Assembly: GCA_030390025.1 (NCBI GenBank)
Contig: JASTWF010000138.1
Location: 682,001-746,000, forward strand
Direction: 5' to 3'
Length of the DNA: 64,000 nt
Source: Squalus acanthias
Lineage: Eukaryota
The position numbers and the translations under genes are program-made. The notes below the pieces were generated by a model that was given only the letters and a program-made list of their open reading frames with translations, ran no database searches and was not told the DNA's origin. Below are positions 1-64,000 of the stretch, in pieces (within the stretch, counting starts at the first letter, position 1; every line of letters starts with the position of its first letter).

Positions 1-1263
1 TGGATGCCCGTGAATGGAAACACCCCGAGCTGGGCTACAGTCAGTGTCCTTACAGGGGAATGGTTCCGCTTTTCGAGACCGGGTGGGAATGAAACACTTG
101 TATGCTTATTGTAATTTGAAAGCAGTGGGTTATAAATGGGTTTGGTTCATTCCGGCGTCAATGCGATCTCTAGAATTCGGTTCGCCTTACCATCAGGACA
201 CTGGTAACCGTGACTCCAGTGCGCTTTCCCGGTCAATGAACTCGATATTTCAGCTGAATGATTTGTAGATCCGTGATATTAGAGCGATGATAGTTGCTGT
301 TACTGAACAAACAATTGAACAGACTTAAAGAATAAACTCCTGCTGTAATTTAAACAGGGTTTCGAGAACCGCCCTTTCTGTGGTTTGCATTTAAAATTTG
401 TTTAAATTCTATCTGTTGAGTTCTCCGCTTCTTTGTGCCAGTTCTTTAAATCTTTCATTCTTTAAAGATTCATAATCTTCAGATGTTGGATTTGCAATGA
501 GAGAGAATGAAGGGAGCGGCGCATCCGCGCTTTTCAACAATTTCCCGCTCATCTGCTTAAAGTGCCCAGGAACAGAGCGCGAGGAGCGGGTTCAAAGGGT
601 GAGGTGTCGGGCGGGATCTCGTTAACAGAAGCTCAACACCAGCAGGGCTTGTAAAACTCCTTACAACTTTCACTCATAATAGAAAAGGATGAGGCTCAGA
701 GAAATAAACACAATGCAGGCAGTTTCGGTTTGTGTTTCGCCCCTTTAACATCGATCTCCAGCATCGGTACAGTTAATGGCTTCAGAAATCAGATCTCAGG
801 CTGTGTCTTTCATTCACATTTTAATATTTCTTGCCCCATCTTCCACACCCTTCCACTCACTGGTCCTGCCCACTGGTTAGTATCAGAAGTCAATGCTTCG
901 CAATGAGCGATGTCTTTTTCTGACGATTATTGCCCGAAGTGCCGACCCAGCCAATTGTGGCAAATTAATTTCAAATATTAATCATCTTTTGATTCAGAAA
1001 TTGACACAACTGTTAGAAAAACAGCATTTAACTCGCTGCCCGGGGTCTGCGTCGAAAATGGAATATTGTGACCTGACGCCCTCTTGTGGATATTCTGAGA
1101 ACGGTTCAGATGTCGGTGGACAGGGTGAGAAATCCTGTGTTTTTTCTCTGCCCTGTCTGTAGTTCCTGTTTATGGGAAGCTGGGTTGGAGCGGTTCTGAA
1201 TTAATATGCGGAGCAGCAGCAAAGGCCTTTCATCGTTAAACTAAAGACTGGACGAAGGAGGTT

Positions 1264-2171
1264 AGAGTCATAGAGTCATAGAGTTATACAGCACAGAAAG
1301 AGGCCCTTCGGCCCATCGTGTCCGCGCCGGCCATCAAGCCCTGTCTATTCTAATCCCATTTTCCAGCACTTGGTCCGTAGCCTTGTGTGCTATGGCGCTT
1401 CAAGTGTTAATCTAAATGCTTCTTGAATGTTGTGAGGGTTCCTGCCTCTACCACCCTTTCAGACAGTGAGTTCCAGATTCCAACCACCTTCTGGGTGAAA
1501 AAGATTTTCCTCAAATCCCCTCTAAACCCCCTGCCCCTTAACTTGAAACTATGCCCCCTGGTTATTGACCCCTCTACTAAGGGGAAAAGTTCCTTCCTAT
1601 CTACCCTATCTATGCCCTCATAATTTTGTACACCTCAATCAGGTCACCCCTCAGCCTTCTCTGCTCTAAGGAAAACAACCCCAGCCTGTCCAGTCTCTCT
1701 TCATAGCTGAAGCGCTCCAGCCCAGGTAATATCCTGGTGAATCTCCTCTGCACCCTCTCCAATGCAATCACATCCTTCCTATAGTGTGGCGACCAGAACT
1801 GCACACAGTATTCCAGCTGTGGCCTAACTAGCGTTTTGTACAGCTCCATCATAACCTCCCTGCTCTTATATTTTATGCCTCGGCTAATAAAGGTAAGTAT
1901 CCCATTTGCCTTTTTAACCACCTTATCTACCTGTCCTGCTGCCTTCAGGGATCTATGTACATGCACACCAAGGTCCCTCTGATCCTCTGTCCTTCCTAGG
2001 GTCCTACCATTCATTGTGTATCCCCTTGCCTTGTTAGTCCTCCCAAAATGCATCACCTCACACTTTTCAGGATTAAATTCCATTTGCCACTGTTCTGCCC
2101 ATCTGACCAACCCATCTATATCGTCCTGTAACCTGAGGCTTCCCTCCTCGCTATTTACCACTCCACCAATT
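1264..2171 (-). mobile_element. CR1 LINE, 5'-truncated
   Basis: ORF 1610-2161 is the RT C-terminus (LVRPQLEYCVQFWSP); short tandem-repeat tail. Confidence 0.9.
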
Positions 2172-2314
2172 CACAGGTTCATAGGATTATGGGTAAAGAG
2201 TGGAGACAGGGGATGAGAAGGGAGAGGCAGGCACGGAAAGAGCATCGAAAGACAAAAGGTGAGTAAGGCACCACAGATACATTTGCGACATGTATTTTTA
2301 TTATTAATACACAG

Positions 2315-2665
2315 GAACATAAGAACATAGGAACAGGAATAGGCCATACAGCACCTCGAGCCTGTTCCGCCATTCAATGAGATCATGGTTGATCTCTGAC
2401 CTAACTTCATATACTCACCTTTGCCCCATATAACTGAATACCTTTGATTAACAAAAATCTCTCAATCTCAGATTTAAAATTAACAATTGACCCAGCATCA
2501 ATTACCGTTTGCCGAAGAGAGTGCCAAACTTCCACCACCCTTTGTGTGTAGAAATGTTTCCTAACTTCACTTCTGAATGTCTGTCTCTAATTGTTAGACA
2601 CTGCAACCTAGTCCTACAATCCCCAAACAGCGGAAATAGTTTCTCTCTATCTACCCTATCTGTTC
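2315..2665 (-). mobile_element. CR1 3' end fragment
   Basis: (AAGAACAT)n tail and CR1 3' UTR. Confidence 0.8.
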
Positions 2666-2829
2666 CCCAATATGAGCTGTAATCAACAACCAATATAATT
2701 CCGCAAATGGATCTCACCTGTTGTTGTTAAGTGTGGTGGTTTTTGCCATTTTAAGGAGGACCCTGTGACTCTCACTGTGGAGGCTGAATTATCGCTTCCG
2801 TTTATCGTTGTGAGAGCGCCCTCTGGTGA

Positions 2830-4037
2830 TAAAGGGGAACCAGTGAATGTAGTATATTTGGATTTCCAAAATGCATTCGATAAGGTACAACATAAAAGGT
2901 TATTACACAAGATTAGGGCTCATGGGATTGGGGTTAATATAGTAGCATGGGTAGAGGATTGGTTAACGGACAGAAAACAGAGTGTAGGGATAAACGGATT
3001 TTTTTCAGTTTGGCAGACTGTAACTAGTGGGGTGTCGCAATGATCAGTGTTGGGGCCTCAGCTATTTAGAATCTATATTAATGACCTAGATGAAGGGACC
3101 GAGTGTAATATTTCCAAATTTGCTGACGATACAAAGCTGGGTGGGACTGTAAGCTGTGAGGAGAACACAAAGAGTCTTCAAAGGGATATAGATAGACTAA
3201 GTGAGTGGGCAGTAAGGTGGCAGATGGAGTATAATGTAGGGAAATCTGAGGTTATTAACTTTGATAGGACGAATAGAAAAACAGAATATTTTTAAATGGT
3301 GAGAAACTTTGAAATATCGGTGTTCAGAGAGATTTGGGTGTCCTAGTGCAAGAAGCTAGCATGAAGGTACAGCAAGAAATAAGGAAGGCAAATGACTTGT
3401 TGGCTTTATTGCAAGGGGGTTAGAGTATAAGAGTAAGGAAGTCTTGCGACAATTGTACAGGGCCTTGGTGAGACCACACCTGGAGTACTGTGCACAGTTT
3501 TGGTCTGCTTTCTAAGGATGGATGTATTTGCCTTGGAGGCGGTGCAACGAAGGTTCACTAGATTCATTCCTGGAATGAGAGGGCTGTCTTATGATGAGAG
3601 ATTGTATAGAATGGGCCTATATTCCCTGGAGTTTAGAAGAATGAGAGGTGATCTCATTGAAACATACAATATTCTGAAGGGGATTGACAGGGTAGATGCT
3701 GAGAGGTTGTTTCCCCTGGCTGGAGTGTCTAGAACTACGGGGCATAGTCTCAGGATACGGGGTAGGCCATTTAAGACCGAGATGAAAGGGAATTTCTTCA
3801 CTCAGAGGGTTGTGAATCTTTGGAATTCTCTGCCCCAGAGGGCTGTGAATGCTGAGTCTTTGAGTATATTCAAGGCTGAGATAGATAGATTTTTGGACTC
3901 TAGGGGAATCAAGGGATATGGAGATCGGGCGGGAAAGTAGAGCTGAGGTCGATGATCAGCCATGATCTTATTGAATAGCGGAGCAGGCTCGAGGGGCCGT
4001 ATGGCCTCCTCCTGCTCCTATTTCTTATGTTCTTATG
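2830..4037 (+). mobile_element. CR1 LINE, 5'-truncated
   Basis: Degenerate RT (YLDFQNAFDKV, FADD) and (TTCTTATG)n tail. Confidence 0.92.
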
Positions 4038-4062: not shown

Positions 4063-4102
4063 GGTCTTTGTACGGGATCCGCTATATCTCTGCAGCAGTG
4101 TG
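4063..4102 (-). other. RSS CACACTG-24-ACAAAGACC
   Basis: Directly follows YFCAMS on the minus strand. Confidence 0.85.
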
Positions 4103-4574
4103 CGGCTCATGGCACAGAAATACACGGCGGTGTCGGAGATCAGGGTGTTGCTGATCGTTTGCTCGGTAATCTTGATAGTTGTCTTAAACGTAGAAGAGAA
4201 TCGGTCACTGAAGTCGGGGTTCCGGTTTACTCTCAATACAATAACATAAAACACGTACTGTGGAGGCTGCCTGGGGTGCTGACTGTACCAGTACATATAA
4301 TGGTTAGGGCAGCTTGTTTTCAAGGTACAGGTTAGAGTGACATTACTTTCCTTTTCAACTGTCATTTCTTGGTGGCTCCATTCTAAAATAAAATAATAGT
4401 AATAGTCATCATCTTATCACCATCATCTCAATAAACATAATCTTCATCATCATCATTTCATCAATAATAACATCTGGGTTACAGTAGTCAGAGGAAGAAT
4501 GAATTTTTAATGGGAAGGAAATACTTACTGAGAAGTGATATAATGATGAGGAGCGATGCGAGACGGTTCCACAT
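4103..4574 (-). CDS. TCR alpha/delta-type V segment (family A copy 1), in frame but with an 8-aa FR1 deletion
   Basis: Leader MWNRLASLLIIISLL (4529-4574) + GTAAGT; exon from 4382: ...VTLTC...YWYSQ...DTAVYFCAMS. Lacks the 24 nt encoding DTVEQPIP seen in the paralog at 42205. Extra Cys in CDR1. Confidence 0.85.
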
Positions 4575-8714: not shown

Positions 8715-8731
8715 CAGCGCCACCTAGTGGC
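8715..8731 (-). promoter_or_regulatory. CTCF-binding motif GCCACTAGGTGGCGCTG
   Basis: Matches the vertebrate CTCF core CCASYAGRKGGCRS; about 40 bp downstream of the RSS nonamer. Confidence 0.8.
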
Positions 8732-8812
8732 TGGGTTTAAAGTATCTCCTTTGAGCTGATCTCACAGAACACGGTTTGTGTTCGAGGTGTCCAGAGGCCC
8801 CTTCTCACTGTG

Positions 8813-9687
8813 GGCCTCAGTGCACAGTAGTACACGGCGCTGTCAACGAGTTGCAGCTCAGTCAAGTTGAAAACAGCGATATTTCTGGACTTTTCCAGAA
8901 TGACAGAGAAACGACCGTTAATTTCGCCCTTTCCAAATGAATGTGCCTGAATTACAAAAGTCGGAGCCTTGTTCTGGCTCTGACGGTAAAGCTGCAGGGA
9001 ATAGCTCACTTCTGACATTGAATAGTTACAATTAATGCTCATCGACGTTCCTTCCGGATATTGGGCTTCTGTTGGCCACTGATCGACGGAGTCTCCAGAA
9101 CTCATCCTGCAGAAAACATTCCTGGTTACCCATGGAAACAGAGAGGAGCACAGATCACACGTTTCTCATTCTTTAAGAATATATCTGTCTAACTCTCTGT
9201 GTATACACAGGGAGACAAAGAGAGAGGAAGCGATAGCATTAGAATAATGGATAGACAGTGACAGATACACAGGTTGATAAAAAGAGAGATAGACAGAGGC
9301 ATGAAAACGGACAGAAAGACAGAAAGACAGGCAGAGTGACAGACATAGAGACAGAGGGACCAACAGTAAAGCAGGCAGATAGACAGACAGTCAGATAGAC
9401 GGACAGAGACAGACAGACAGACAGACAGATAGCGAGACAGACAGGCAGACAGACAGACAATTCGATAGACAGGTGGATAGACCTAGAGATCGAGGAGAGA
9501 GAGGGCGACCGAGAGAGAGAGAGAGAGAGACGCAAAGAGACAGAGAGAGAGAACGAGACAGGCCTAGAGATCGATGAATTGAAGACAGTTGTGTCAATAG
9601 TGGAATGGACAGACAGATGCATCAATAAATAAACCAACCGAATAACAACGTAGGAAAGGACCAAATAACGAAAAGCCCAAACTCCCT
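8813..9687 (-). pseudogene. TCR V segment (family B copy 1), probable pseudogene
   Basis: Open V exon SSGDSVDQWP...SINCNY...LQLYRQ...DSAVYYCALRP (8813-9106). Leader 9639-9687 has ATG->AGG (paralog at 47945 has ATG). Exon start is 1 nt shorter than the paralog at 41024, breaking the phase. RSS CACAGTG-24-ACACAAACC at 8773-8812. Confidence 0.8.
9200..9590. repeat. AG/GACA microsatellite-rich intron
   Basis: (AGAC)n and (AG)n runs; paralog at 47450-47830. Confidence 0.85.
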
Positions 9688-10349
9688 AATGGCCGCAGTC
9701 TCCCCACACCGGAAGCCCGCACTTCACCCGGTGCCTCCTCTCAGCTGCAGCTTTCGGACTGAAGGGGAGAATTTGAAATGTTTCCGTCAGCACACCGAGT
9801 CCCCGTCATTTCCTGAATCAAACCAGGAGCCTGGTTTCAATGAGCTGCCGGTGATCATTGTCCCTCTCTGTGTTCATTATCACAGCCCGCGGTCCTGGCG
9901 CACAGGCTCCGTGAGCTGTTCTGCTTTGTCCCGGACATCTTATCATCCGATCCCGGGAATGGGTGAGGATTCTGTCTGACCGTTACCGGTGTTTTGAAAT
10001 TGATGCTCATGGTTAACGAGGAATCGATTTTCGGGTTTTCTTGTTGATGGAATATATTCCATTCGATAGAAATGAAAACCTGACACGATGTTGTCGGAAT
10101 TCCCATTAACGACAGTTTAATCTCGAACATTTTTGTCTGTATTTGTGTTTGTTTATCTGAACATGTCGGTATATGCATTTCTCTGTTTGTTTCCAGTGCT
10201 CCTAGTCAGGCTTGTAGTGGACACAGGAGGGCGCTCTCTGATCACTTGTGCAGATCATTCGTCTGAAACAACTTTCAGCTGAATACGCCTCAATACCTCC
10301 ACGCAGATCCACCAGTTGTGTGTAGCGGGGTTTGCTTTGGTGCGTGGGT

Positions 10350-10545: not shown

Positions 10546-10787
10546 GTTTCTAATACACTGTGTTTCTAATACGTGAAGCTTGTACTGTCCACAGGAGGGC
10601 GCTCTCTGATCACTTGCTAAAGGACATGATCCCCAACTACAGGAAGTGGCTGTATCGAGGGATACAAATGGCGGGGAGAAGAAATCCCAGCAGATCTGAT
10701 GAGATCATCGCGCTGTTTCAGTTCCTCCCATTCCAGGCCTGGTACGTGCAGTGATCACAGTCTGTTTCTGGAGTTCAGACTGAAACC

Positions 10788-12678: not shown

Positions 12679-14029
12679 CACACTGTTACAGGGGCGCAGT
12701 CAGTCCGTACAAAAACCAGCAAAGGACTCTCACTCACTCTCACTGAAACAGATCTGGGACCTCGATTGTGACCTGATAATAGAACAGAAATCAAATAATA
12801 GAGATAAACAGAAGGATCAATAAATAGATGGATAGGTAATTAAATAGATAGACAGACAGAGAGATAACTCTACAGTCTCCCTCTCCTCATTGTCTCTCCC
12901 AGTGACCCCTTCCTCCTTTGTTTGACAGTATCCGTCCCATGCAGACAAAGCCCAGCCCGTGTGGATTCCGGCTGCGGAGTCCGCGAGTGTAAAACGCGAT
13001 GTATTTCACGGCTCTGTAACGTGTTTGTTCTTGTTACATTAGGAGCTGACTGATGAGATAGTTGAACAGTAGCGCTTCGATCATCATCCTGAGTGCCCGA
13101 CTGCAATGACACCAAGAGGTAAATAAGATCGTGAAGAGTATTAAAAAAGCTAACTGAATATTTATTCAAAATTAAACTGCTGAAGTAGAACGGGTTCAAA
13201 CTATGAAAGGTCAGTTTTAGGCTGATATCAGGAAATTCTTCAAAAACAGAGAGTGATTAATGTGTGGAATCAGCTTCAAGATGGAACAGCAGAGGGAAGA
13301 ACCTGTGAACAATTTCGGAAAACAATGGATATTCCAATGGGGAGGGGGAGTTAGCATCACTCTGGATGAACTAAGAGGGGCCGAATACCCTCTCACATCT
13401 GGAATTATATTGTGATCTTCTGAACTGCATTTGCAGGAGTTGGCGCTCGGAATTGCACCTTGTAGTTACATTTAGTCACCACCAGAGGTCGGTGCGATGT
13501 TGTGCTCGCTCTATTGGTTTAAGTGCAGATCCAAGTTAGACTGAAAACATTATTCAGTGATTTTACTGAAGAAACTGAGTAAAGAAACAGATTCGGAAGT
13601 GGGGCATACATTTCAAATGCAAGTTGCGTTGTATTTAAATGTTATTATGAATTATTAAAGTATTATGAATGTCAATGCGTTGTAAATATATTAAAAAGCA
13701 GCTCACCCCAGTATCACTGACCCTATCTACTGTTCGTACCTACCCATTCTGCTCAAACCTGTCAGTCACTCCCCATTTCATTTGTCTAATTTACCGCATC
13801 GTTGTGTTCAAATTGCACAGGACCGGTTGGCCGTCTATATATATTGGCTTTATATCGGCTGTGGGTGGTTCTAATGGTCAGTTTGCAGCTCCTTTAATGG
13901 GATTCTCCGGCACGGATACCAGAACAACAATCTGTTCCCCTTCACAGACTGACCCTGCTAAATGGCTCATTAATCCCCGTCCAGTTCCGTGTTGTGCGGA
14001 AACCAATTTCACGCTTTTCCCTCATCCCC

Positions 14030-20636: not shown

Positions 20637-20688
20637 TTATTGTCTGTTTTCACCCAATATCCGAACAATGTAAAAAGTCTCATCGTAT

Positions 20689-20703
20689 CCGCCAGAGGGC
20701 GCC
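20689..20703 (+). promoter_or_regulatory. CTCF-binding motif CCGCCAGAGGGCGCC
   Basis: Strong core match, intergenic. Confidence 0.7.
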
Positions 20704-21876
20704 GTGGTCGCAAGGTTCTCGCTGCTCCCTCGGGACTCGAACCGTTGTTCTTCCTGATTTGTGTAAAAGCATCATAATTTCAAAGCCTATTGCGTTTGTG
20801 TTCGTGCGATTCAGCAAAGTTTCCCCCCATCTCTTTTAATTGACAGCTATTCATCGTCACAATCTCTACCACGCTTATGAATTATTTCCTTATACTGCAA
20901 ATCTTAAAGCGACTGTGAGTGACATCTTTGGTAGCTGCCGTTTGAAAAAAACCCTTATATCTTAAAATCTGGAATGAATGACACACTCAGAGAGACGGGA
21001 CTGTAACCCGGGTGAGGAGTATCTCCCGTGTCAATAAGCACCATTTCCCTTCCCATGTGATTAATTTCAGCACAGTGGAATGGCGCCTCCTGTGAGTTTC
21101 AGGCAGACATTAATCTAACAGGTTCAGCAGATATTTGGGGAAGGGGCTCATGTTCCCCTCCGAGCAATTACCAACACAGTCGGTTGATGGCGGTAAGATA
21201 TTATCCCGAAGTGACAATATATCGGTTTGAAAGTAGATGAAGCTGTTGTTTATTTCAATCACTGCCACTAATCAGACTGAGGTGGTTGACGGGGAGTCGG
21301 GTTTGATTAACCTGCTTGGGACCCATAGTGGGAAGATTTCCTCCGGTCTCTCTCTGGAAATCTCATCCACAAGTTGTTTTAACGAAATCGCAAGCTGATT
21401 ATTTTAGAATGCGTTCACTATTTCGTTAGAAATAGCGACCAGAGTAAATCTACCGCACAGAGCGGATAGTTCAGTGTAAACAAAATTGTTACGGGAGAAG
21501 GAAGTTAATGCTCTCGGTGAGCCGTAACACACCGACATAAAATAAACAAACACACAATGTGACCAATTCGGGCCCATTAAATAAATCCCCAAACCTCAGC
21601 AAAACTGAAACTTTCTTCACACCACAGGCAGCGCTCACTGAGTGATTGGCTCCACCTTCTGATACTTTATACCGTGGTTCAAAGGGCTTCAACTGAGCCA
21701 TGAGCCTCACTTGAATCTCATTTCAATATATGGCGGGTATATTGGAGAAGGTGTCATTGGAGGGGAACAATGAGAGCAGGAAGTGACGTTGGACCAATAG
21801 GAGCATCTGACGAGGTCGATTCCGGTCCGGAATTGGGCTTTTCAAGAGACCGACAGGTTCGGGCTCGGCAGCGGCC

Positions 21877-34564: not shown

Positions 34565-34579
34565 AGCGCCCTCTGGTGA
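34565..34579 (-). promoter_or_regulatory. CTCF-binding motif
   Basis: TCACCAGAGGGCGCT about 25 bp downstream of the family A RSS. Confidence 0.72.
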
Positions 34580-34644
34580 GCACTAACTGGAACTCTCAGT
34601 GTGGAGTTTTTGTACGGGATCCGCTATATCTCTGCAGCAGTGTG

Positions 34645-35144
34645 GGTCTCATGGCACAGAAATACACGGCGCTGTCGGAGATCAGGGCGTTGCTGATCGT
34701 TAGCTCGGTAATCGTGGTAGTTTTATTAAATGTAGAAGAGAATCTGTCTATGTCAGTGAAGTCGCGGTTCCTGTTTACTATCCCTGCAATAATATAAACC
34801 ACGTACTGTGGAGGCTGCCCGGGGTGTTGACTGTACCAGAACACTGTAGGGGTAGTAGTGCTTGTTTTCACGGTGCCGGTTAGAGTGACATTACTTTCCT
34901 CTTCAACTGTCATTTCAGGAACCGGCTGTTCCACTGTGTCTTGGCGGCTCCATTCTAAAATAACATAATAGTAATATTCACCATCATCATCACCTCAATT
35001 AACATAACCATCATCATCACCATCATTTCACCAATACTAACACCTGGGTTACAGCAGTCGGGGGAAGAATGCATTTTTACTGGGAAGGAAATACTTACTG
35101 ACAAGTGATATAATGATGAGGAGCGGTGCGAGACGGTTCCGCAT
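34645..35144 (-). pseudogene. TCR V segment (family A copy 2), ORF open but Cys23->Gly
   Basis: Leader MRNRLAPLLIIISLV (35099-35144); exon from 34954: VTLTGTV...FWYSQ...DSAVYFCAMRP; RSS CACACTG-24-ACAAAAACT at 34605-34644. Confidence 0.85.
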
Positions 35145-35995
35145 GACACTCCCTGGGTCTATAACTCTGCTGTCCGGGAAATTCTCTGTCGGAGCAGAAA
35201 TAAAGACCACCGCGCCACTGCACTGCTGAAACAACCAATGCCAAACAGGAAAACAGCGGCAGCAATCTCTCCAATAACACAGGGCAGGCAAGGCGGGTCA
35301 GAGCGAGAGCAGCAAACGAAAGCTGTGGGCGGGGCTGCCGCGGGCAGTGTCACCGCAAGATTTGTCTCTATAATTTCCAGTTGATAACGGCAACAAACAT
35401 GTGACCACGGCGCCCTCTGCCGGTGACTCTGAGAATTTCACACTGTCAGGATAATGGACAGAATAAAGTGTGAGTTTATCGATGGGGCAGTTTCCAGAGG
35501 CCTGTTATTGGGAGACAATGTGTATTGTTTCAGACAATTCAGCTTTGTAAATAGGGCGAAGGGAAATGTGAATTAATTTAAAGGAAAGGACATTTTACTT
35601 TATTTCTGAATCTCTTTCTTTATGGCTTTCTCTCATGTTTTAGCTTTGTGTTTCTCACTCGTTATTTCTCACTTTCTTTCATTTCTCTTTCCCTCTTTTC
35701 CTAATGTGCTGTCAGCTACACTCTCATTATTTCACCGCTTTTTCTCTTTCTCTCTCTCATTCTCTCTTTGGTGTTTTCTCTTTCTTTTCCTCTCTCTATG
35801 TTTCCACCTCTCTTCATTTCTCACTTTCTTTAAATCTCTCTCTTCAATATATTATCATTGTTCTGTGCTCAGTCCCTCTGCCCTCCGATTATCATAACCG
35901 GGCCCTCCCAATACCGTTACTCCAAACACAGCAGAGCGGCGCTCCCCCTCGGGGCAGGTTTCTGTGCGGACTCTCCGCCTGTTTGTTACACTGTG

Positions 35996-36830: not shown

Positions 36831-36854
36831 TATCTCACAAAGCTACTGCTTCCC

Positions 36855-37460
36855 TATGTTGGTGTCTCCTTGCTTCACTCTTCTAAGTCACACCTTTATC
36901 GATCACCCTCTGTTGTTGTCTCTCTGCATCACTAACTGTACTCAGTCTCACCTTTATCTACCTCCTTTTCTTATCACTCACTGTATTCAGTCACACCTTT
37001 ATCTATCTCCCTCTCTTATCACTAACTGTACTCAGTCTCAATTTATCTATCTCCCTCTCTTATCACTCAATGTACTCAGTTATACCTTTGTTTATCTCCC
37101 TCTTATATCACTCACTGTACGCAGTCACACCCTTATCTATCTCTCCCTGTCGGTGTCTCTCTGTATCACTGTACTCAATCACACCTTTATCAATCTCCCT
37201 CTGTTGGTGTCTCTCTGCATCACAATACCCGGTTACACCTTTATTTAACTTTTTTGTTGGTGTCTCTCTGTATCACTCACTGTACTCCGTCACGCCTTTA
37301 TCAATCTCCTTCTGATGGGGTCTCTCTGTATAACTGTGCTCAGTCAAACATTTATCCAGCTCCCACTATTGGTGTCTCTGTATCACTAAATTCTGTCACA
37401 CATTTATCTATCTCCCTCTGCTGGTGTCTCCCTGTATTACTGTATTCAGTACTAAAATCC
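36855..37460. repeat. Diverged minisatellite, unit about 43-55 bp
   Basis: Recurrent TCACTCACTGTACTCAGTCACACCTTTATCTATCTCCCTCT. Confidence 0.8.
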
Positions 37461-41023: not shown

Positions 41024-41297
41024 GACTGAGTTCCGGACAATCCGTCGAGCAGTGGCCAACTGGAAGGAACCTCGATGGGCATTGATTGTAATTATTCAAC
41101 CTCCGAACTACTACCTGGAGCTTTATCTTGAGAACCAGAACAAGACTCCCACTCGGATAATTCGAAGACATTCCTTTGGAAAGGACGAAGTTAACGGCCA
41201 TTTCTCCGTCATTCTGAACAAGCCGAAAATTTTCTGTTTTCACCCTCACTCAGCTGCAGCTCGCTGATAGCGCCGTGTATTACTGTGCACTGAGGCC
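41024..41297 (+). pseudogene. TCR V pseudogene (family B copy 2)
   Basis: Acceptor CAG->CGG, frameshifts, no leader; ends DSAVYYCALRP; RSS CACAGTG-23-GCAGTATCC at 41298-41336. Confidence 0.85.
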
Positions 41298-41377
41298 CAC
41301 AGTGAGAAGGGCCTCGGGACGCCTCGTGCAGTATCCGTGTCCTGTGAGATCAGCTCAAAGGAGATACTTTGAACCCG

Positions 41378-41394
41378 GCCACCAGGTGGCGCTG
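41378..41394 (+). promoter_or_regulatory. CTCF-binding motif GCCACCAGGTGGCGCTG
   Basis: Perfect core match, about 40 bp downstream of the RSS. Confidence 0.8.
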
Positions 41395-42038: not shown

Positions 42039-42508
42039 ATGCGGAACCGACTCGCACCGCTCCTCATCATTATATCACTTCTCAGTAAGTATATTTTTCC
42101 GAATATGAATCCATTCTCCCCCTGACTGATGTAACCCAGATGTTATTATTTGTAAAATGTTGATGATGATGATGATGATGACTGCTACGAATCTTTTATG
42201 TTAGAATGGAGCCACCAAGACACAGTGGAACAGCCGATTCCCGAAATGATGGTTGAAGAGGAAAGTACTGTCACGCTAAACTGCACCTTGAAAACAAGCA
42301 ATACTTCCCCTTATGTGTTCTGGTACAGTCAGTACCCCGGGCAACCTCCACAGTACGTGGTTTATATTATTGCAGGGATAGTAAATTGGAACCCCGACTT
42401 CAGCAACCGATTTAATTCTACGTTTAATAAAACTACCAAGACTTCCGAGCTAACGATCGGTAAAGCCCTGATCTCCGACGCCGCCGTATATTTCTGTGCC
42501 ATGAGCCC
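42039..42508 (+). CDS. Intact TCR V segment (family A copy 3)
   Basis: Leader MRNRLAPLLIIISLL (42039-42084) + GTAAGT; exon from 42205: QDTVEQP...TLNCTL...VFWYSQ...DAAVYFCAMSP. Confidence 0.92.
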
Positions 42509-42548
42509 CACACTGCTGCAGCGATACAGCGGATCCCGTACAAAAACC
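42509..42548 (+). other. RSS CACACTG-24-ACAAAAACC
   Basis: Consensus nonamer 24 nt after the heptamer. Confidence 0.88.
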
Positions 42549-42572
42549 CAGACTGAGTGTTCCGGTTAGTGC

Positions 42573-42587
42573 TCACCAGAGGGCGCT
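42573..42587 (+). promoter_or_regulatory. CTCF-binding motif TCACCAGAGGGCGCT
   Basis: About 25 bp downstream of the nonamer; paralogs at 2815-2829(-), 34565-34579(-), 44445-44459(-). Confidence 0.72.
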
Positions 42588-43337
42588 CTCACACCGATAA
42601 AAATAATCAAGAATTCAGCCTCCACAATGAGAGTCACCGTGAGATTCTAAAAAGGGCAAAAACACAACTCTTAACAAGAACTGGTGCTCCACGTGCGGAA
42701 TTATATTAGTTGTTGATTTCAACTCGTATTTATAGTAATAATAGAACTGCACAAATCATGTCTGCGGTGCCTCAACACAATTTTTGTGTTTAGATGCCCT
42801 TTCAGTGTCTGCCTGCAGTATTGTGCAGCCCTTTACACATCTCCCCTGTCAGTTTTCTTGACCCTTTCATCGTGGCCTGTACACAGGGTTTATTTGATCA
42901 GAGTATGTTGCTGGGTCAGAGACAGTTTATACATAATGAACAGATTTCACAAGGTAGTGATTTTACTCTTTAATACAGGCCCCAAGCACAGAGTTCCCCC
43001 AATGTCCATTGTCCTTCAGAATGTCTCTTTAATGCTGGAATATTTTCTGCCACCATTAACAATCCCTCAGCTTCCGGGTTACAATAAACGGACAAGAGTT
43101 TCATTCCCACCCCCGGTCTCTAAATGCGGAACCATTCCCCTATAAGGACACTGACTGTAGCCCAGCTCGAGGTGTTTCCATTCACTGGCAGCCAGCTCAC
43201 CACCTACCGGTCTCACACTGGGGACACAAGGAAGTGAGGTGAGAGCATCCTGAGACACGACAGCAGATTATTGAGGGCGGGGGTTAGAACGGGTGTCTTC
43301 AAATATCCAACCCCCTTTTACAGAGCGGACAGCGACA

Positions 43338-43802: not shown

Positions 43803-44459
43803 CACGGTGATGGAAACCCGTTGAACCCTCGTACAGAAACTCCCGGCGCTTTACTGATCTGAGGTGAATCGAGTCCCGAGGGAGCAGCGAGAAACATGTG
43901 ACAATAGCGGCCTCTCGCTGCTATGATGGGAACTTTTACATTGTCGAGATACTGGATGTAAACACACAGTAAGTGAATCTGTGGGGCATTATCCAGCGCC
44001 CGTTTATGGGACGATGTATTGCAGCAATATTGATCACAAATGTCGATAACCATATATGGTCCACTTCAGTTTAAGTCTTGCTGATTCGTTTTCTTTTTTA
44101 CATTTGTCAGGGAAGCCAGTTGATTGAAGCTCGTTCAAAACAACATGAAACCACAGCGATGCCGAATATTAATTGCCGCGCCATAAAGGATGGAGATTCA
44201 TCTCATGATTCCCGTCCATCCAATATACTGTGGGATTATTTAATGTAACTGCAACCATTTTAAACTCTCGCTGAGCTGCCGTTATTATCTTTAATTATTA
44301 ATGCAAGTTGAAATCACCAACCAATATAATTCCGGCAAAGGACCTCACCTGGTCTTGTTGAGCCTTGTGTTTTGTTGCCCTTTTAAGAAGGTTCTTGTGA
44401 CTCACTGCGGAGGCTGGATAATTTCTTCTGTTTAGAGGCGTGAGAGCGCCCTCGGGTGA

Positions 44460-45227
44460 TGTTACGGAGTTGGAAATAGGCGGCGTTACTCATGCCACGG
44501 ATGTGTTGTCGGAAGCTCACTTCAGTGCCAAATATGACACCAAGGTTGCGAACAGTGTGGTTCAGCCTCAGGCAGAAGCTAGGGAGAGGGATGGAGTCAG
44601 TGGTGAGGGAACGGAGTTTGTGGCAGGGACCGAATCAATGATTTTGGTCTTCCCAATATTTAACTGGAGAACATTTCTGCTCATCCAGAACTGGATGTCG
44701 GACAAGCAGTCTGACAATTTAGAGACCATGGAGGGGTCGAGAGAAGACGTAGTGAGGTAGAGCTGGGTGTCATCCGCGTACATGTGGAAACTAACGCTGT
44801 GTTTTCAGATGATGTCGCCAAGGGGCAGTATGTGGATGAGAAATAGGAGGGGGCCAAGGATAGATCCTTAGGGGCTACCAGAGTTAACGATGCGGGAGCG
44901 GGAAGGGACGCCATTGTAGGTGATTCCCTGGCTACGATTAGATAGATAAGAATGGAGCCAGACGAGTGCAGTCCCACCCAGCTGGATGACGGTGGAGAGT
45001 TGTTGGGGAAGGATGGCGTGGTCAACCGTGTCAAAGGCTGCAGACAAGTCAAGAAGGACGAGGAGGGATAGTTTACCTTTGTCGCAGTCAGAAAGGATGT
45101 CATTTGTGACTTTGATGAGAGCTGTTTCGGTACTGCGGCAGAGGTGGAAACCTGATTGAAGGGATTCAAACATGGAGTTGCGGGAAAGATGGGCACTGAT
45201 TTGGGAGGCGACAACACGTTCAAGAAT
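44460..45227 (-). mobile_element. L2-like LINE internal RT fragment
   Basis: QSGF...STETAL...LLDLSAAFDTVDH...YADDTQLY. Confidence 0.88.
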
Positions 45228-45229
45228 AT

Positions 45230-47348: not shown

Positions 47349-47365
47349 CAGCGCCACCTGGTGGG
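47349..47365 (-). promoter_or_regulatory. CTCF-binding motif CCCACCAGGTGGCGCTG
   Basis: Perfect core match downstream of the relic RSS. Confidence 0.8.
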
Positions 47366-47406
47366 CGGGTTTAAAGTATCTCCTTTGAGCTGATCTCACA
47401 GAACAC

Positions 47407-47945
47407 GATTACTGTACGAGGTGTCCCGATGCCCTTCTCACTGAGGAAACAAAGTAAAAGAGAGATAAAGCAATAGATTAATGACTATATAAAGATAGAT
47501 AGAAAGTTGCATAAACAGAGATAGTGAAACAGAGAGAGAAGGACAGAGAGCCAGAGACAGAGAGACAGACAGAATGAAGGAGAGAGAGCGAGGGAGAGAG
47601 CGACCGAAAGAGAGAGAGAGCGAGCGAGAGACAGATAGAGAGAGAGACAGGGAGAGACAGAGGGAGAAACAGAGAGAGAGACAGACAGATAGACAGAGAG
47701 AGAGAGAGACAGAGAGAAGGAGAGAGAGAGACAGAGAGAAGGAGAGAGAGCTAGGGAGACAGAGAGAGTGACGGAGACAGAGTGAGAGACAGATAGACAG
47801 ACAACTAGACTGATCTAGAGATCGATGAATGGAAGACAGTTGTATCAATCGTGGAATGGACAGACAGACACAAATGTATAAATAAATAAACCAACCAAAT
47901 AACAAACGTTGTTAGACCCCAAAGAATGAAAACCCCAAACTCCAT
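47407..47945 (-). pseudogene. Family B relic: leader and RSS kept, V exon deleted
   Basis: Leader MEFGVFILWGLTTFV near 47897-47945; RSS remnant (CT)CAGTG-23-ACAGTAATC near 47407-47445; flank homologous to 8600-8812. Confidence 0.7.
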
Positions 47946-49940
47946 AATGGCCGCAGTCTCCCCACACTGGGACCCCGCACTTCACCCGATGCCTCCTCTC
48001 AGTTGCAGCTTTCGGACTGAAGGGGAGAATTTGAAGTGTTTCTGTCAGCACACGGAGTCCCCGTCATTTCCTGAATCAAACCAAGAGCCTGGTTTCAATG
48101 AGCTGCCGGTGATCATTGTCGCTGTCTGTGTTCATCATCACTGCCCGCGGCCCCGGCACACAGGCTCCGTGAGCTGTTCTGCTTTGTCCCGGACATCTGA
48201 TCATCCGATCCCGGGAATGGGTGAGGATTCTGTCTGACCGTTAACGGCCTCACCCACAATACCTGGACACATCCCGGAACTGCTCGGAAGTTCGATTGAC
48301 GTTTATTCTTCAAAAGGACTCTCATTTTAACCTTGATTAGAAATCGATGCTCACGCTTAATGAGGAATCGGTTTTAGGGTTTTCTTGTTGACGAAAAATG
48401 TTTCATTTGATAGAACTAGAACTTTTAACACGATGTTGTGGCAATGTCACTACCTCAGAATATTCCGTTAAGGACCGTTTACTCTCCAAAGTTTCAGTCT
48501 GTGTGTGTGTGTGTTTATCTCTCTGTGCTTGTTTCTGTGTATCTGTGTAGCCATTGCTCTATGTCAGGCGTGTGGTGACCACAGCCCTGATAAGTTGTTA
48601 AAGCTCTTTCATCTTAAACAACTCAGCTGAATATACACCAATAAACTCCATAATATATCAACCATTGTGTGTATCTGGATCACCATCACCTTCTCAATGG
48701 TAATTAGGGATGGGCAATAAATGCTGGCGTTGCCAGCGACGTCCACGTCCCATGAATGAATTAAAAAATGCCTGTATGTATTATTATGTGTGTATATGCC
48801 TCTGTGCGTGCAAATGCCTGTGTGTATAAACCTGTGTGTATATTTCTATGTGTGTGTATGTCTGTGTGTATTTATGTTTATATGTAAGTGTGTGTGTTTC
48901 CAATGTACTCGTACTCGTACATGCTCGTACTTTCCACCGGAGGGCGCTCTCTCATCACTTGAAAAAGATAATAATTCCCATCTGCAGGAAGTGGCTACTT
49001 AGAGAAATACGATTGGGCGGCGAAAAGAAATACCAGTCGATCTGATCAGATCCCCGCGTTGTTTCAGTTTCATCCATTTCAGTACAGGCAGTAATCAGAG
49101 TCTCTTGTCTGTGGAGTTCAGACTGGAAAATACAGCCTGATCCGATCGGGTTCCTCCAGTTAAAGTTATTGCTGTCATTGTTGGGATAAGCGAAATTTCT
49201 CAACCATTTTAACCCAGGGTCAAATTCAGACATTTCCACCCCAGTGTTAGCACAGAGCTGACTCTGGGATGAATAACAGGATCGATCTCTACAAATAAAT
49301 GTCCTGGGTGTCGTCAAGATCCGCCAGGTCACATTTTAAAAGCTATCTCACTGGTGCCGAGGGCTGTCCACTTATCATGGCCCTCGTAGTCTTGAGGGTT
49401 CGACTAGTAATGGAGCTCATTGACTGTGGTGGGAACTGAATCATACCGAGGATTGAATTGATTTAGATAATTTTTCTCTTTTCACCTTAATGAGAGACAG
49501 AGAGAGAGAGAGAAAGAGATAGAGAGGAAGACACCGAGTTAAACACAGAGAAAGACACCGAGCTAAACAGAGCGTGTGACACCGAGGCAGAAAGAGAGAG
49601 AGAAAGGGAGAGACAGAGAGAAACAGAGACAGAGAGATAGGCAGACAGAGAGCGAGAGTCAGAGAGGCAGAGAGAGAGATAGAGTCACTGACTCACTCTC
49701 ATAGCTTGGCAAGGATAGGGTTTGTAGGGAGACATCAGTAATTGATCCACAACTAACACTGATTGGTGCACAGCTGGTGTCAGTTCTGAGAGACCAGCCA
49801 ATCCTGTCCTTGGGAAACGCCCCTCAGTCTCCCAATAAGTGAAGTCTGCCCCTGATCTGAATTTACTCTTCAGTATCAGACTAGAAGGGACAACACATTT
49901 CAAACATTGTTATTTTTCATCGCAACCTGAATCAGACACC

Positions 49941-55878: not shown

Positions 55879-56742
55879 TTGTTATCTGGCTTTTTCTTAA
55901 GATTCTGTCCCGGAGCACCGCGTGCAATGCCTGGGTCAACCACCAGGGGGCGGCGGGACTCCACCCTTCCGCTCAGTGAAGACCGTGCCTTAAGTTCAGA
56001 TGGAGTTTGTCAACTGTATATGAGGTACCAGTTGGCTGCCGGAAATTATTGCAATGGAAAAGGGTTCGATCGAAATCAACTCCTGATGTGAAGATCAGAA
56101 AAACAGAGGAACCGTCAACTCACCAAATTGGCACAATATTTGTTTAAAAAGCAAGATGGTGACACCAAGAATTCTATATCCCTGTAATGAACGACCACTG
56201 ACGGTGAAGGAAGGGGAGTGGATACAATGATCAGTGTGAGGTGATGTCAGTCACGTGTTGAATTGGTTCAGGAACATTTTTTATTCATGTTTTTAATTCA
56301 TGTGGACGTCGCTGACAAGACCGGCATGCACTTTCCATCTCTACTTGCACTGATACAACTGACGGTCTTGCTGGGCCGCTTCATAAGACAGCTAAGAGTC
56401 AACCACATTGGTGTGGGACTGGACTGGAGTCACCATTTCAGGGCAACGGGGGACCGGCAATAAAGGCGACTCGCCAGCGACACCTGCAGCCCGAGAATGA
56501 ATTAACATCCCACTTCTATTGATCCAATCAGACTGGGTCTCTCTCTCTCGTATGTCCAATCATCGCAAGGACCGTTAACGGACGGTCCCGATTAGTTTAA
56601 GCTGGAGCACGTGATTTGTCATTGAAGAATATTGCCGCGAGCTGCTTAGTGCAAATACTGGATCAGCTTCCCAGCAAAGGAGAGAGTATTGGAAATCAGC
56701 TCGACCCGGAGAGGCCCACACTGGCTGGGATTGTCGGAGATC

Positions 56743-58439: not shown

Positions 58440-58860
58440 GCAGGGCCTAGTGCAATAATTACTGATACAGCGACTAGTGTAATATAAACTGAGGCAGGGT
58501 CTCGTGTAATATAAACAGAGACAGGGTCTGGTGTAATATAAACTGAAACAGGGCCTAGTGTAATATAAACAGAGACGAGGTCTAGTGCAGTAATAACTGA
58601 GACAGGGCCTAGTGTAATATAAACAGAGACAGGGCCTAGTGTAATATAAACAGAGACAGGGTCTAGTGTAATATAAACAGAGACAGGGTCTAGTGTAATA
58701 TAAAAAGAGACAGGGTCTAGTGTAATATAAGCAGAGACAGGGTCTAGTGTAATATAAACAGAGACAGGGCCTAGTGTAATATAAACAGAGACCGGGTCTA
58801 GTGTAATATAAACAGAGACAGGGTCTAGTGTAATATAAACAGAGACAGGGTCTAGTGTAA
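58440..58860. repeat. 27-bp satellite, block 1
   Basis: AGAGACAGGGTCTAGTGTAATATAAAC repeated in tandem. Confidence 0.95.
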
Positions 58861-61870: not shown

Positions 61871-61900
61871 GTTTCGTGGAAGGCAAACAATCGTGTTTTC

Positions 61901-61916
61901 GCTGCCACCTGGTGGC
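61901..61916 (-). promoter_or_regulatory. CTCF-binding motif GCCACCAGGTGGCAGC
   Basis: Perfect core match next to the satellite end. Confidence 0.75.
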
Positions 61917-62546
61917 AAAGCTTTACCATTGCTCCTATTAGGAAAATTAAGATGTCAGTTACTGTTTCTGATATTAATGTAGCAAGAAGCACCTTGCATT
62001 GAAGTACCACCTCATCACATTCTATGGGAGTTCCCGAAGGATTTGAAGTGCAACTAATTGCAGGTGAATGTGGCCGATTCGCGCACAGAAAGATCAGCAA
62101 AAGAGCAAAGTGGCTCGATTCCTGTCACTGTATTTCTGTTGAACTTGCTTGAAGGGAGGAATGTTGACCCGGACACAGTCTGGGACCCTGGGAGCTTTAA
62201 TGTCCACCTCAACAGACAAGATGCGGCGGGCGCGGAGAGATTATTCGTTCAGGAAAGGTAGTTCCTTTTCAGTGCTGCACCGATTCGACGCCTAGATAAT
62301 GTGCTTAGGTTCTGAAGTTGATGTGAAGTCTGCAATCGATTGATTCTGAAACCAGAATAAAGTCACTTTAGCCAAGCTGCTACTAAAATGCTTAATGGGT
62401 TTAGGTGACATTTGCGCAAAGAAAGTTCAGCAAAACTATTTTAAAATAATACCGGTTAACATTTTTGATATTCAGCGTCCATATATCACAAATAGTAACT
62501 TCAACAATACAATTACAAATCTTTTGATTCGTGCAATTTAAATTCA

Positions 62547-63070
62547 CTGAATCATGGGATCTTACGGCACAGAAGGAGGCCACTCGGCCCATCGTGCCTG
62601 TGCCTGTTCCAGCTCTTTGAATGAGCTATGCAATTACTTCCACTCTCCTGTTCTGTCTCCAAAGCCCTGTAAATGTTTCCTTTCAAGTATTTATCCAATT
62701 CCCTTTTGAAAGATACTGTTGAATCTGCTTCCGCCACCCTTTCAGGCAGTGCATTCCAGATCATAACAACTCGCTGCATTAAAGAATCTCCTCATATCCC
62801 CGCTGTTTTTTTGGCAATTATCTTAAATCTGTATCCTCTGGTTACCGACACTCCTGCCAGTGGAAACATGTCTCACTGTTAACTCTATCAAAACCCTTCA
62901 TGGTTTTTGAACAATTCTATTAAATTCCATTTAACCTTCTCTACTCTAAGGAGAACAATCCCAGCTTCTCCAGTCTCTCCACATAACTGAAGTCCCTCAT
63001 CCCTGGTACAATTCTAGTAAATCTCCTCTGCACCCTATCCAAGACCTTGACATCCTTCCTAATGTGTGGA
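62547..63070 (-). mobile_element. CR1 3' fragment
   Basis: QRVVMIWNALPERV and 3' UTR. Confidence 0.85.
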
Positions 63071-64000
63071 TTGAAATAAATTCAATCTTTATTTCTCCTT
63101 CAGATTATTTCTAAGGAATACATGCTCTCTTAAAATTGGACTGAGCAGTAATCTGAGTATTATCAATATTGATAGCAATGATATTCCTTGTTCTGACAGT
63201 GACTTGTGGGCACAGCAACATCGGCGTCTGCACGATTCATGTTTGAATAAGATCACTGTCGCCACCTGCTGATGAACAGCATCTACTACAGTCCCCTGAG
63301 TTTATTAAACATGATTCATAATTCCGCATTTACCGAGTTACGTTCACCTAGAGGAATTTCTCAGGCGAACCAGAAGAGGGGCAATGGATCAGGAGGAATT
63401 AAGGGCGGAATGTCTAAAATTACTGTTATAAATTCAACTTCACCTCTTCTTTGGCCAAAACTTATCGAGCAGTCAGTTTAAGGGTTCCACAGGTGACAGC
63501 CGGGGATTCCAGGAAATACTTCAGTGTTTTAACACCGCACACGCTGGTGTATTTAGGGCAAGAGCCGACACATAAACTGCAGGTGTTAGGTTGCGGGAGA
63601 CTGTGACATGGTCCAATCTCACGGTGTAGTCCGAAGGAGAAGGATAAGAATTCTTCCATCCACAATGTTTCCTCAATGTGTCGTAAACAGACAGACAGAC
63701 AGAGAGATGTGTCGATCATTGTGTAACCATAGCATATTGTAATTATTGACCACAAATTGATATGATCTAGAAAGTACCTGGAATCCCAAATCCCTTCACT
63801 CCTCCACCAGAGTGGGAGTCAAATATACTTTCTGGCAGAGAATTCCACATTCTCACCTCGCTCTGTGTAAATCATGTTTTCTAACCATAAAATGTATCTT
63901 TTGCCGCGTCATGTTTACATAGAATATACAGCACAGAAACAGGCCATTCGGGCCAACTAGTCCATGCAAAAAAGACAATTTCTATCTTGTTTATTTCTGT

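What the first reader, a model, noticed from the sequence alone, without database searches (positions are those of the whole stretch)
1075..63272. Dense CTCF-motif array tied to V-RSS cassettes: a candidate loop-extrusion V(D)J architecture in a shark-like TCR locus
Seen: about 16 matches to the CTCF core at 1075(-), 2815(-), 8715(-), 10221(+), 10589(+), 20689(+), 34565(-), 35409(-), 41378(+), 42573(+), 44445(-, degenerate), 47349(-), 48934(+), 55940(+), 61901(-) and 63258(-). All lie in non-TE DNA. In families A and B the motif sits 25-40 bp 3' of the RSS nonamer and always has the same orientation as its V gene. Others lie upstream of promoters. Established: mouse Igh proximal VH and Tcra V segments carry nearby CTCF-binding elements that promote RAG access during cohesin loop extrusion. 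Inference: V+RSS+CTCF behaves as one duplicating module, and this control logic may date to the base of jawed vertebrates. Unlike mouse Igh, both motif polarities are intermixed here.
Basis: partly seen in the sequence, partly recalled or inferred. Interest (0 to 1): 0.85.

Follow-up and report, generated by a model that had tools for sequence, protein, structure and literature searches.

The report
CTCF motifs linked to shark TCR V genes
A shark T-cell-receptor V-gene cluster carries far more strong CTCF-type motifs than chance allows, about one per V gene and mostly pointing the same way as it, which resembles the mouse elements that steer V(D)J recombination, but binding and function are untested.

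Summary
All 16 listed positions carry a CTCF-core match: 15 of 16 score at least 14 bits, and 44444 is weak at 10.2 bits. Two strong sites were missed, at 13476(+) and 37409(-). That gives 17 hits of at least 14 bits against about 1 expected.

The window is a TCR alpha/delta-like V array with 19 V-domain hits on both strands, interspersed with LINEs.

- **Next to the RSS:** a motif lies about 21-40 bp behind the RSS in only two V families, which is 4 of 17 RSS-bearing Vs plus one orphan RSS.
- **Elsewhere:** the other sites are intergenic or upstream of the next V.
- **Orientation:** 14 of 17 sites share the strand of the nearest V.
- **Conservation:** among paralogues the motif is a conserved island.
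- **Independence:** after collapsing paralogues there are about 10 independent sites.

The best reading is real V-unit-linked CTCF-binding elements, like the RSS-associated ones of mouse Igh and the promoter-upstream ones of mouse Tcra.

First readers noted the same pattern on several other windows of this genome; none has been checked.

The parts
8715..8733 (-). Family A CTCF-type motif, 23.7 bits, about 39 bases behind the V2 RSS
8773..8812 (-). V2 RSS: heptamer CACAGTG, 24-bp spacer, nonamer with 1 mismatch
8815..9093 (-). V2 exon (family A), open frame
41376..41394 (+). Family A CTCF-type motif, 26.0 bits, 39 bases behind the RSS of the truncated V13p
41221..41336 (+). V13p remnant (last 25 codons) with intact heptamer and decayed nonamer
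47349..47367 (-). Family A CTCF-type motif, 22.8 bits, behind an orphan RSS
47405..47443 (-). Orphan RSS remnant. Homology to V2 and V13p starts within a few bases of the coding/heptamer border. About 470 bp holding leader and V are missing.
34564..34582 (-). Family B CTCF-type motif, 17.7 bits, about 22 bases behind the V9 RSS
34605..34943 (-). V9 exon plus RSS (family B; Cys23 replaced by Gly)
42570..42588 (+). Family B CTCF-type motif, 17.7 bits, about 21 bases behind the V14 RSS
42216..42548 (+). V14 exon plus RSS (family B, open frame). Candidate leader ATG at 42039.
2814..2832 (-). Family B CTCF-type motif, 18.5 bits, split from the V1 RSS (4102-4063) by a LINE fragment
2828..4037 (+). 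5'-truncated LINE 3' fragment inserted at the 5' edge of the family B motif of V1
4063..4389 (-). V1 exon plus RSS (family B, open frame)
44444..44462 (-). Degenerate family B motif, 10.2 bits (A to C at a key position). It belongs to the broken V16p unit. A high-copy repeat starts near 44489.
10586..10604 (+). Family C motif, 16.9 bits, 184 bp upstream of the candidate V3 leader ATG (10788)
10218..10236 (+). Family C motif, 14.8 bits. It shares only a 39-bp island with 10586.
48931..48949 (+). Family C motif, 17.7 bits, paralogue of 10586, 992 bp upstream of the candidate V17 ATG
20686..20704 (+). Family D motif, 19.3 bits, 1173 bp upstream of the candidate V6 ATG
35408..35426 (-). Family D motif, 19.8 bits, between V10 and V9, 465 bp upstream of the V9 exon
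1074..1092 (-). Single motif, 16.6 bits, 3 kb downstream of V1, same strand
13476..13494 (+).
37409..37427 (-).
55937..55955 (+). Single motif, 23.6 bits, 58 bp past a LINE 3' fragment, 1.1 kb upstream of V19p
61900..61918 (-). Single near-palindromic motif, 23.5 bits, at the edge of the 27-bp satellite
63257..63275 (-). Single motif, 16.0 bits. No V within 6 kb in the window.

Best explanation
The motifs are genuine CTCF-binding elements belonging to the V gene units of a shark TCR alpha/delta-like V array. There is roughly one per V unit, and each has the polarity of its V.

**Shown:**
- The sequences match the vertebrate CTCF core far more often than chance allows.
- They avoid the LINE copies.
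- In four paralogous groups they are the best-kept stretch of the flank.
- In two V families they sit about 21-40 bp behind the 23-type RSS and were copied together with V and RSS.

**Inferred:**
- CTCF bound there faces its cohesin-blocking side away from the V, towards whatever lies 3' of the RSS.
- Cohesin reeling chromatin from a (D)J recombination centre on that side would stall next to the RSS and prolong its exposure to RAG. This is what the RSS-associated element of mouse VH5-2 does.
- The sites upstream of leaders would act like the mouse Tcra/Tcrd V-promoter elements, as loop anchors or insulators between neighbouring V promoters.
- The mixed polarity most simply reflects whole blocks (V, RSS and motif together) having been inverted or duplicated in inverse. 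If so, inverted Vs would not gain from extrusion coming from the same side and would depend on another centre or on diffusion.
For: - **Enrichment:** 17 hits of at least 14 bits against 1.0, 1.06 and 0.84. The IUPAC core gives 12 against 0.71. At 18 bits or more there are 9 against 0.07.
- **Independence:** self-comparison groups the 17 into 4 families plus 6 singles, about 10 origins. That is still about ten times the whole-window expectation.
- **Position:** 4 of 17 RSS-bearing Vs have a same-strand motif of at least 17 bits within 40 bp of the RSS. Only 1.5% of random 120-bp windows hold a hit of 14 bits or more.
- **Polarity:** 14 of 17 sites are on the strand of the nearest V.
- **Constraint in family A:** the 58 columns from nonamer end to motif end have 5 variable columns, against 33 of 100 just downstream (Fisher 4e-4) and 11 of 40 in the RSS. 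The three variable motif columns fall at matrix positions 2, 3 and 8.
- **Constraint in family B:** a 22-column block holding the core is invariant but for one column across 4 copies whose flanks differ.
- **Constraint in families C and D:** islands of 39 and about 17 columns sit in otherwise poorly alignable DNA.
- **CpG:** CpGs within the motifs are kept in 21 of 30 copy-columns against 76 of 169 in the flanks.
- **Relatives:** contigs from four other organism labels hold the V-RSS-motif blocks at 90% identity or more. None of the 40 differences shown falls in the three motifs laid.
- **Literature (passages read):** skate TAD boundaries carry oriented MA0139.1 motifs (PMC10115646). Mouse RSS-associated CBEs and V-promoter CBEs are described in PMC10293834 and PMC5859386.
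Against: - There is no occupancy, accessibility, contact or repertoire data. The listed runs were DNA contigs only, with no RNA holder.
- 13 of 17 RSS-bearing Vs lack a motif of 9 bits or more behind the RSS.
- Strong motifs persist beside a truncated V (V13p) and beside an RSS with no V at all (47349). So they are not tied to a working V, or the losses are recent.
- Mixed polarity does not fit scanning from a single side. Co-orientation is expected from block inversion alone.
- The families have few copies (2-4), so the conservation tests are small. Gene conversion could mimic constraint.
- In one search, 171 difference rows were hidden, and the relatives are only a few percent diverged.
- The matrix and the IUPAC core were recalled from memory.
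Confidence: 0.55

Rival explanations
1. Passenger motifs. A few chance or ancestral CTCF-like sequences were multiplied by segmental duplication of V units. They have no present role in recombination or folding.
For: - 11 of the 17 strong sites fall in only 4 paralogous families.
- Blocks such as 8594-12796 and 47230-50495 are duplicates at about 80-84% identity.
- Motifs remain next to dead or missing Vs.
- One copy has decayed (44444).
Against: - About 10 independent sites remain after collapsing, against roughly 1 expected.
- The motif is better kept than its flanks in all four families.
- Six single sites score 15-23.6 bits.
- Column-permuted matrices run on the same duplicated sequence never reach 17 (0 of 500).
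Confidence: 0.2
2. Transposon-borne motifs. The sites ride on short mobile elements (SINE or MITE type) that spread CTCF motifs, as SINE B2 does in rodents (recalled, not from a call).
For: - In two family B copies, homology starts right at the motif edge.
- A very high-copy repeat starts about 27 bp from site 44444.
- Genome-wide copy numbers of the single sites could not be measured.
Against: - No strong site lies in the LINE copies or other families of 3 or more copies. The exceptions are the V family itself and one tandem repeat.
- The edge at 2814 is explained by a LINE fragment inserted there.
- Summed contig depth over the family B flank is like that of the V14 exon and far below the repeat at 44489 onwards. 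This is a poor measure by the tool's own caution.
- Rfam finds no RNA-derived element (0 matches).
Confidence: 0.1
3. Real CTCF sites whose role is not V(D)J targeting. They would insulate neighbouring V promoters or mark borders, for instance towards the IgM cluster that an unchecked note places 4.7 kb past the window's end. The RSS proximity would be incidental in a very compact array.
For: - V units lie only 1-3 kb apart, so any intergenic site is near some RSS or promoter.
- Most sites (12 of 17) are not RSS-adjacent.
- 61900 and 63257 lie far from any V in the window (note s1-888250).
Against: - Two unrelated V families each place the motif within 40 bp of the RSS on the V strand.
- In family A the whole nonamer-to-motif stretch is nearly invariant.
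Confidence: 0.15

Closest known systems
RSS-associated CTCF-binding elements of mouse Igh proximal VH segments (VH5-2/VH81X type)
   Same: - The CTCF core lies within 100 bp downstream of the V RSS.
- It has the polarity of the V.
- It is present in whole V families, so it was copied with the V.
- In mouse it stalls extrusion next to the RSS.

Sources: PMC5859386 Table 2 and PMC10293834, passages read.
   Different: - Here the locus is TCR alpha/delta-like, not Igh.
- Only 2 V families in this window have it (4 of 17 Vs).
- Vs and motifs point both ways.
- Binding and function are untested.
CTCF sites upstream of V promoters in the mouse Tcra/Tcrd locus
   Same: - Same type of locus.
- About one site per V: 144 bound sites for 131 Vs in mouse (PMC5859386 Table 2), and 17 motifs for 19 V hits here.
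- Some sites here lie 184-290 bp upstream of candidate leaders.
   Different: - That table lists the mouse Tcra/Tcrd sites as upstream of promoters or intergenic, not at RSSs.
- 129 of 144 mouse sites point to J-C, whereas here the split is 8 to 9.
- The array here is far denser, with one motif per 3.8 kb.
Mouse Igk V region, with Vs and CTCF sites in both orientations
   Same: V segments lie on both strands, so joining by inversion is implied. CTCF sites occur in both polarities (PMC5859386, passage read).
   Different: In mouse Igk there is no correlation between CTCF orientation and V orientation, according to that paper. Here 14 of 17 sites share the strand of the nearest V.
Oriented CTCF motifs at TAD boundaries of the little skate
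   Same: A cartilaginous fish in which the same JASPAR motif, with orientation bias, marks loop-extrusion boundaries (PMC10115646, passages read).
   Different: Those are megabase-scale domain borders found with Hi-C and ATAC in fin tissue. They are not sites tied to antigen-receptor gene segments.

Membership tests
RSS-associated CBEs of antigen-receptor V segments | Match to the CTCF core motif | tested here: met
   17.7-26.0 bits of a maximum of 27.5 at the five RSS-adjacent sites. The IUPAC core matches with 0-1 mismatch. The matrix was recalled from memory.
RSS-associated CBEs of antigen-receptor V segments | Position within about 100 bp downstream of the V RSS | tested here: met
   About 21-22 bases in family B and 39 in family A. 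This applies to 4 of 17 RSS-bearing Vs plus one orphan RSS; 13 of 17 have none.
RSS-associated CBEs of antigen-receptor V segments | Polarity pointing from the V towards the D-J-C end | tested here: inconclusive
   The motif is on the V coding strand in all RSS-adjacent cases. No J or C lies in the window, and Vs point both ways, so the direction towards D-J-C is unknown.
RSS-associated CBEs of antigen-receptor V segments | CTCF and cohesin occupancy in developing lymphocytes | not testable with these tools
   The listed runs are DNA-type contigs, with no ChIP, ATAC or RNA holder.
RSS-associated CBEs of antigen-receptor V segments | Loss of the element lowers use of that V | not testable with these tools
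   This needs repertoire data or editing. The natural split of V1 from its motif by a LINE could serve as a test if V usage were known.
V-promoter-upstream CBEs (mouse Tcra/Tcrd type) | Motif shortly upstream of a V promoter or leader | tested here: inconclusive
   10586 lies 184 bp from a candidate leader ATG. 35408 lies about 290 bp from a leader placed by homology. Other sites are 0.6-1.2 kb away. The leaders are predictions from a simple search.
Transposon-borne CTCF sites | Motif lies inside a dispersed repeat family | tested here: not met
   0 of 17 strong sites lie in LINE copies. 2 of 17 lie in intervals with 3 or more self-matches: one in a tandem repeat and one because the V family has four copies. 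Families absent from the window could not be tested.
TCR alpha/delta V segments | V-set domain ending in YxC and followed by a 23-type RSS, with TCR alpha/delta as the nearest solved relatives | tested here: met
   19 V-domain hits from an HMM built on 10 seeds of this window. RSSs have 22-24-bp spacers. Among single-V-domain chains, TCR alpha and delta give the full-length matches for V14 and V2. No C or J lies in the window, so the assignment to alpha/delta rests on similarity.

The most novel reading that the evidence does not exclude
Coupling a CTCF element to the V RSS, so that cohesin extrusion parks the RSS at the RAG centre, is not a mammalian Igh speciality. It would be an old, or repeatedly re-invented, part of the V(D)J machinery, already at work in a shark TCR locus. 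There the element's polarity travels with each V through inversions, which would sort Vs into those served by scanning and those served by diffusion.
Probability: 0.3. Interest if true: 0.8.

Novelty: new member of a known kind. Interest (0 to 1): 0.6.

Why it matters
How RAG finds distant V segments has been worked out almost wholly in mouse. If sharks also place oriented CTCF elements at V RSSs and V promoters, extrusion-guided V choice would date to early jawed vertebrates or have arisen more than once.

This compact array offers natural tests:
- families with and without the element;
- Vs on both strands;
- one V split from its element by a LINE.

Two full-text searches found no paper on CTCF in shark antigen-receptor loci. 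Subscription journals are largely outside that library.

Tried and rejected
- **Cross-species test failed.** The only relative found for V14 was a Chiloscyllium punctatum hypothetical protein (67% identity; 1 hit among 1 candidate). That protein model reads through the RSS. I considered guessing from its residues whether a motif follows, and dropped the idea as undecidable.
- **No naming from V4 relatives.** A search with V4 gave only two snake V-set proteins, which did not help to name the locus.
- **Rfam** found nothing in the window (0 matches).
- **Sequencing runs.** All holders were contigs and none was on record as RNA, so transcription and copy number could not be read. The lay of four other organism labels shows presence only. 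Depth is summed over contigs, and 171 difference rows were hidden.
- **Mobile-element idea for family B set aside.** I considered that the family B flank is a mobile element because two copies lose homology at the motif edge. One edge is a LINE insertion. The other is probably a decayed RSS with small deletions, but that alignment is weak (score 59.5).
- **No shared origin across families.** I looked for an extended motif common to the families. Beyond the core, only an 11-letter run is common to families B and C, which is within the known consensus, so I claim no common origin.
- **Leader positions** come from a crude search. V2, V5 and V7 gave none, and the V9 leader was placed by homology only.
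- **Supplementary files** of papers were not opened; none was needed for the claims made.


Full report
**What the window is.** The 64,000 bases hold no N and are 45% G+C with CpG at 0.55 of expectation.
- A profile built from 10 V-like frames of the window finds 19 V-domain stretches, 12 on + and 7 on -. They form blocks of alternating orientation.
- 17 of them are followed by a recognisable heptamer, and those the RSS scan found have 22-24-bp spacers.
- The exons end in YFCAM, YYCAL and the like. Among solved chains with a single V domain, the full-length matches for V14 and V2 are TCR alpha and delta chains.
- The one database relative of V14 is a bamboo-shark hypothetical protein. First-reader notes on the same genome speak of NAR-TCR and IgM clusters (unchecked).
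- I therefore read the window as part of a shark TCR alpha/delta-type V array.
- Between the Vs lie four long LINE copies with esterase-like ORF1, endonuclease and reverse transcriptase, many 5'-truncated 3' fragments of the same family, and a 27-bp satellite.

**The observation.** With the MA0139.1 matrix (recalled from memory), every one of the 16 listed places has a hit on the stated strand. 15 of 16 score 14.8-26.0 bits and one scores 10.2. Two further strong hits, 13476(+) and 37409(-), bring the total at 14 bits or more to 17.

Controls:

| Control | Result |
|---|---|
| 300 whole-window dinucleotide shuffles | mean 1.0, max 4 |
| 200 shuffles within 500-bp blocks | mean 1.06, max 5 |
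| 500 column-permuted matrices on the real sequence (keeps all duplications) | mean 0.84, max 11, none reaches 17 |
| IUPAC core with up to 1 mismatch | 12 matches against 0.71 expected |

The excess grows with score: 9 against 0.07 at 18 bits.

**How many are independent.** Self-comparison groups the sites as follows:

| Group | Sites |
|---|---|
| Family A | 8715-, 41376+, 47349- |
| Family B | 34564-, 42570+, 2814-, plus the decayed 44444- |
| Family C | 10586+, 48931+, and 10218+ (shares only 39 bp) |
| Family D | 20686+, 35408- |
| Singles | 1074-, 13476+, 37409-, 55937+, 61900-, 63257- |

About ten origins against roughly one expected is still a large excess. By my own Poisson arithmetic it is about 1e-7.

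**Relation to V and RSS.**
- Only families A and B are RSS-adjacent. That covers 4 of 17 RSS-bearing Vs (V2, V13p, V9, V14), with about 39 or about 21-22 intervening bases, on the V strand.
- 1.5% of random 120-bp windows hold a hit of 14 bits or more.
- A fifth copy follows an RSS whose V and leader are gone.
- In V1 a LINE fragment (2828-4037) was inserted at the motif's 5' edge and moved it 1.2 kb from the RSS.
- V10 has an 11.1-bit match starting at its nonamer's last base. V18 has 8.7 bits, 4 bases after the RSS.
- The remaining Vs have nothing there.
- The other strong sites lie between successive Vs, 184 bp to about 1.2 kb upstream of the next candidate leader.
- 14 of 17 sites share the strand of the nearest V. 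The exceptions are 37409 (in a tandem repeat between divergent Vs) and 61900 and 63257 (no V within 4.7 kb in the window).
- Counted by origin, that is 7 of 10.

**Signs of constraint.**
- Family A: the stretch from nonamer end to motif end has 5 of 58 variable columns. The next 100 columns have 33 of 100 (Fisher 4e-4) and the RSS has 11 of 40 (p = 0.024). The nonamer has decayed in the two copies without a working V, yet the motif has not.
- Family B: four copies keep a 22-column block with one change, amid flanks full of changes and gaps. That one change, in the broken V16p unit, drops the score from about 18 to 10.
- Families C and D: the motif is an island in barely alignable DNA.
- Pairwise identity of the 19-mer exceeds that of both 100-bp flanks in all four families. 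CpGs are kept more often inside the motif (21 of 30 against 76 of 169).
- These samples are small, and gene conversion could contribute.

**Relatives.** Coded runs from other organism labels hold parts of 40400-44600. When laid at 90% likeness, four of them cover the V-RSS-motif blocks with many short contigs. None of the 40 listed differences lies in the three motifs there, but 171 rows were hidden and the relatives are close. The same lay shows a very high-copy repeat from about 44489. This fits a mobile element inside the V16p exon.

**What it most likely is.** The sites are most likely V-unit-linked CTCF-binding elements.
- That cartilaginous fish use this motif with an orientation code is reported for skate TAD borders (PMC10115646, passages).
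- In mouse, CTCF lies within 100 bp of the RSS for the proximal VH families and upstream of many Tcra/Tcrd V promoters. There are 144 sites for 131 Vs, and 129 of 144 point to J-C. In Igk, site and V orientation are uncorrelated (PMC5859386, passages and Table 2).
- The RSS-associated element of VH5-2 impedes extrusion past the recombination centre, and its deletion cuts use of that V 50-fold (PMC10293834, passages).
- The shark arrangement V, RSS, then forward motif matches this geometry for Vs that join by deletion.
- For inverted Vs the element would face away from a centre on the same side. Co-orientation is therefore more simply a trace of block inversion and inverse duplication than proof of function.
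- Binding, looping and any effect on V use are inference.

**Rivals.** Three rival readings are scored in their own section: passenger duplication, transposon carriage, and CTCF sites with a non-recombination role. The enrichment after collapsing paralogues, the permuted-matrix control and the conservation islands weigh against the first. The LINE map and the explained family B edge weigh against the second. The third cannot be separated from the main reading without experiments.

**Novelty.** Two full-text searches returned no paper dealing with CTCF in shark antigen-receptor loci (search listings and abstract starts only). The kind of element is known from mouse. This would be a new member in a distant lineage and in a different locus type, with the twist of V-linked polarity in a mixed-orientation array. 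First readers of this scan noted the same pattern on several other windows of this genome. Those notes are unchecked and add no weight, but they suggest the feature is locus-wide.

Noticed in passing
window 47405-47540 (-), compared with 8773-9283: This is an orphan RSS. Homology to the V2 and V13p units begins within a few bases of the coding/heptamer border. About 470 bp holding leader and V exon are missing, while the RSS remnant, spacer block and motif remain. A deletion ending at the RAG cleavage site could be a germline RAG footprint.
   Followed up: partly
window 8734-8772, 41337-41375, 47368-47406: The 39 bases between nonamer and motif in family A are almost invariant (2 of 39 variable columns). 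They are better kept than the RSS or the V exon end. No function is known.
   Followed up: partly
window 2828-4037: A 5'-truncated LINE 3' fragment is inserted at the edge of the family B motif of V1, moving it 1.2 kb from its RSS. This is a natural separation-of-elements allele.
   Followed up: yes
window 44489-45253: A very high-copy repeat (summed contig depth 26,000 to 800,000 in four runs) lies between the 5' half of V16p (45391-45254) and a possible decayed V end, RSS and motif.
   Followed up: partly
window 14523-18075, 23467-26673, 27177-30383, 51692-55765: There are four long LINE copies with a GDSL-esterase-like ORF1, an AP-endonuclease and a reverse transcriptase. One has a 1002-codon open frame (23570-26575, -).
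   Followed up: partly
window 58441-58862 and 59879-61844: A 27-bp satellite of about 16 and 72 copies starts right at the 3' end of a LINE fragment (58384). It ends about 55 bp before the near-palindromic motif at 61900.
   Followed up: no
window 8815-9093 (-) and 51227-51517 (+): V2 and V18 read LQLYRQ where V domains usually have W-Y/F-R-Q, so Leu stands in place of the conserved Trp.
   Followed up: no
window 36507-37450: A block of 45-111-bp tandem repeats between the divergent V10 and V11 is rich in CACTGT- and CACACT-like strings. It holds the 15.0-bit motif at 37409.
   Followed up: no
window 43869-43973 (-) compared with 20636-20740: Behind the V15 RSS, on the opposite strand, lies a decayed homologue of the family D flank without a scoring motif.
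   Followed up: partly
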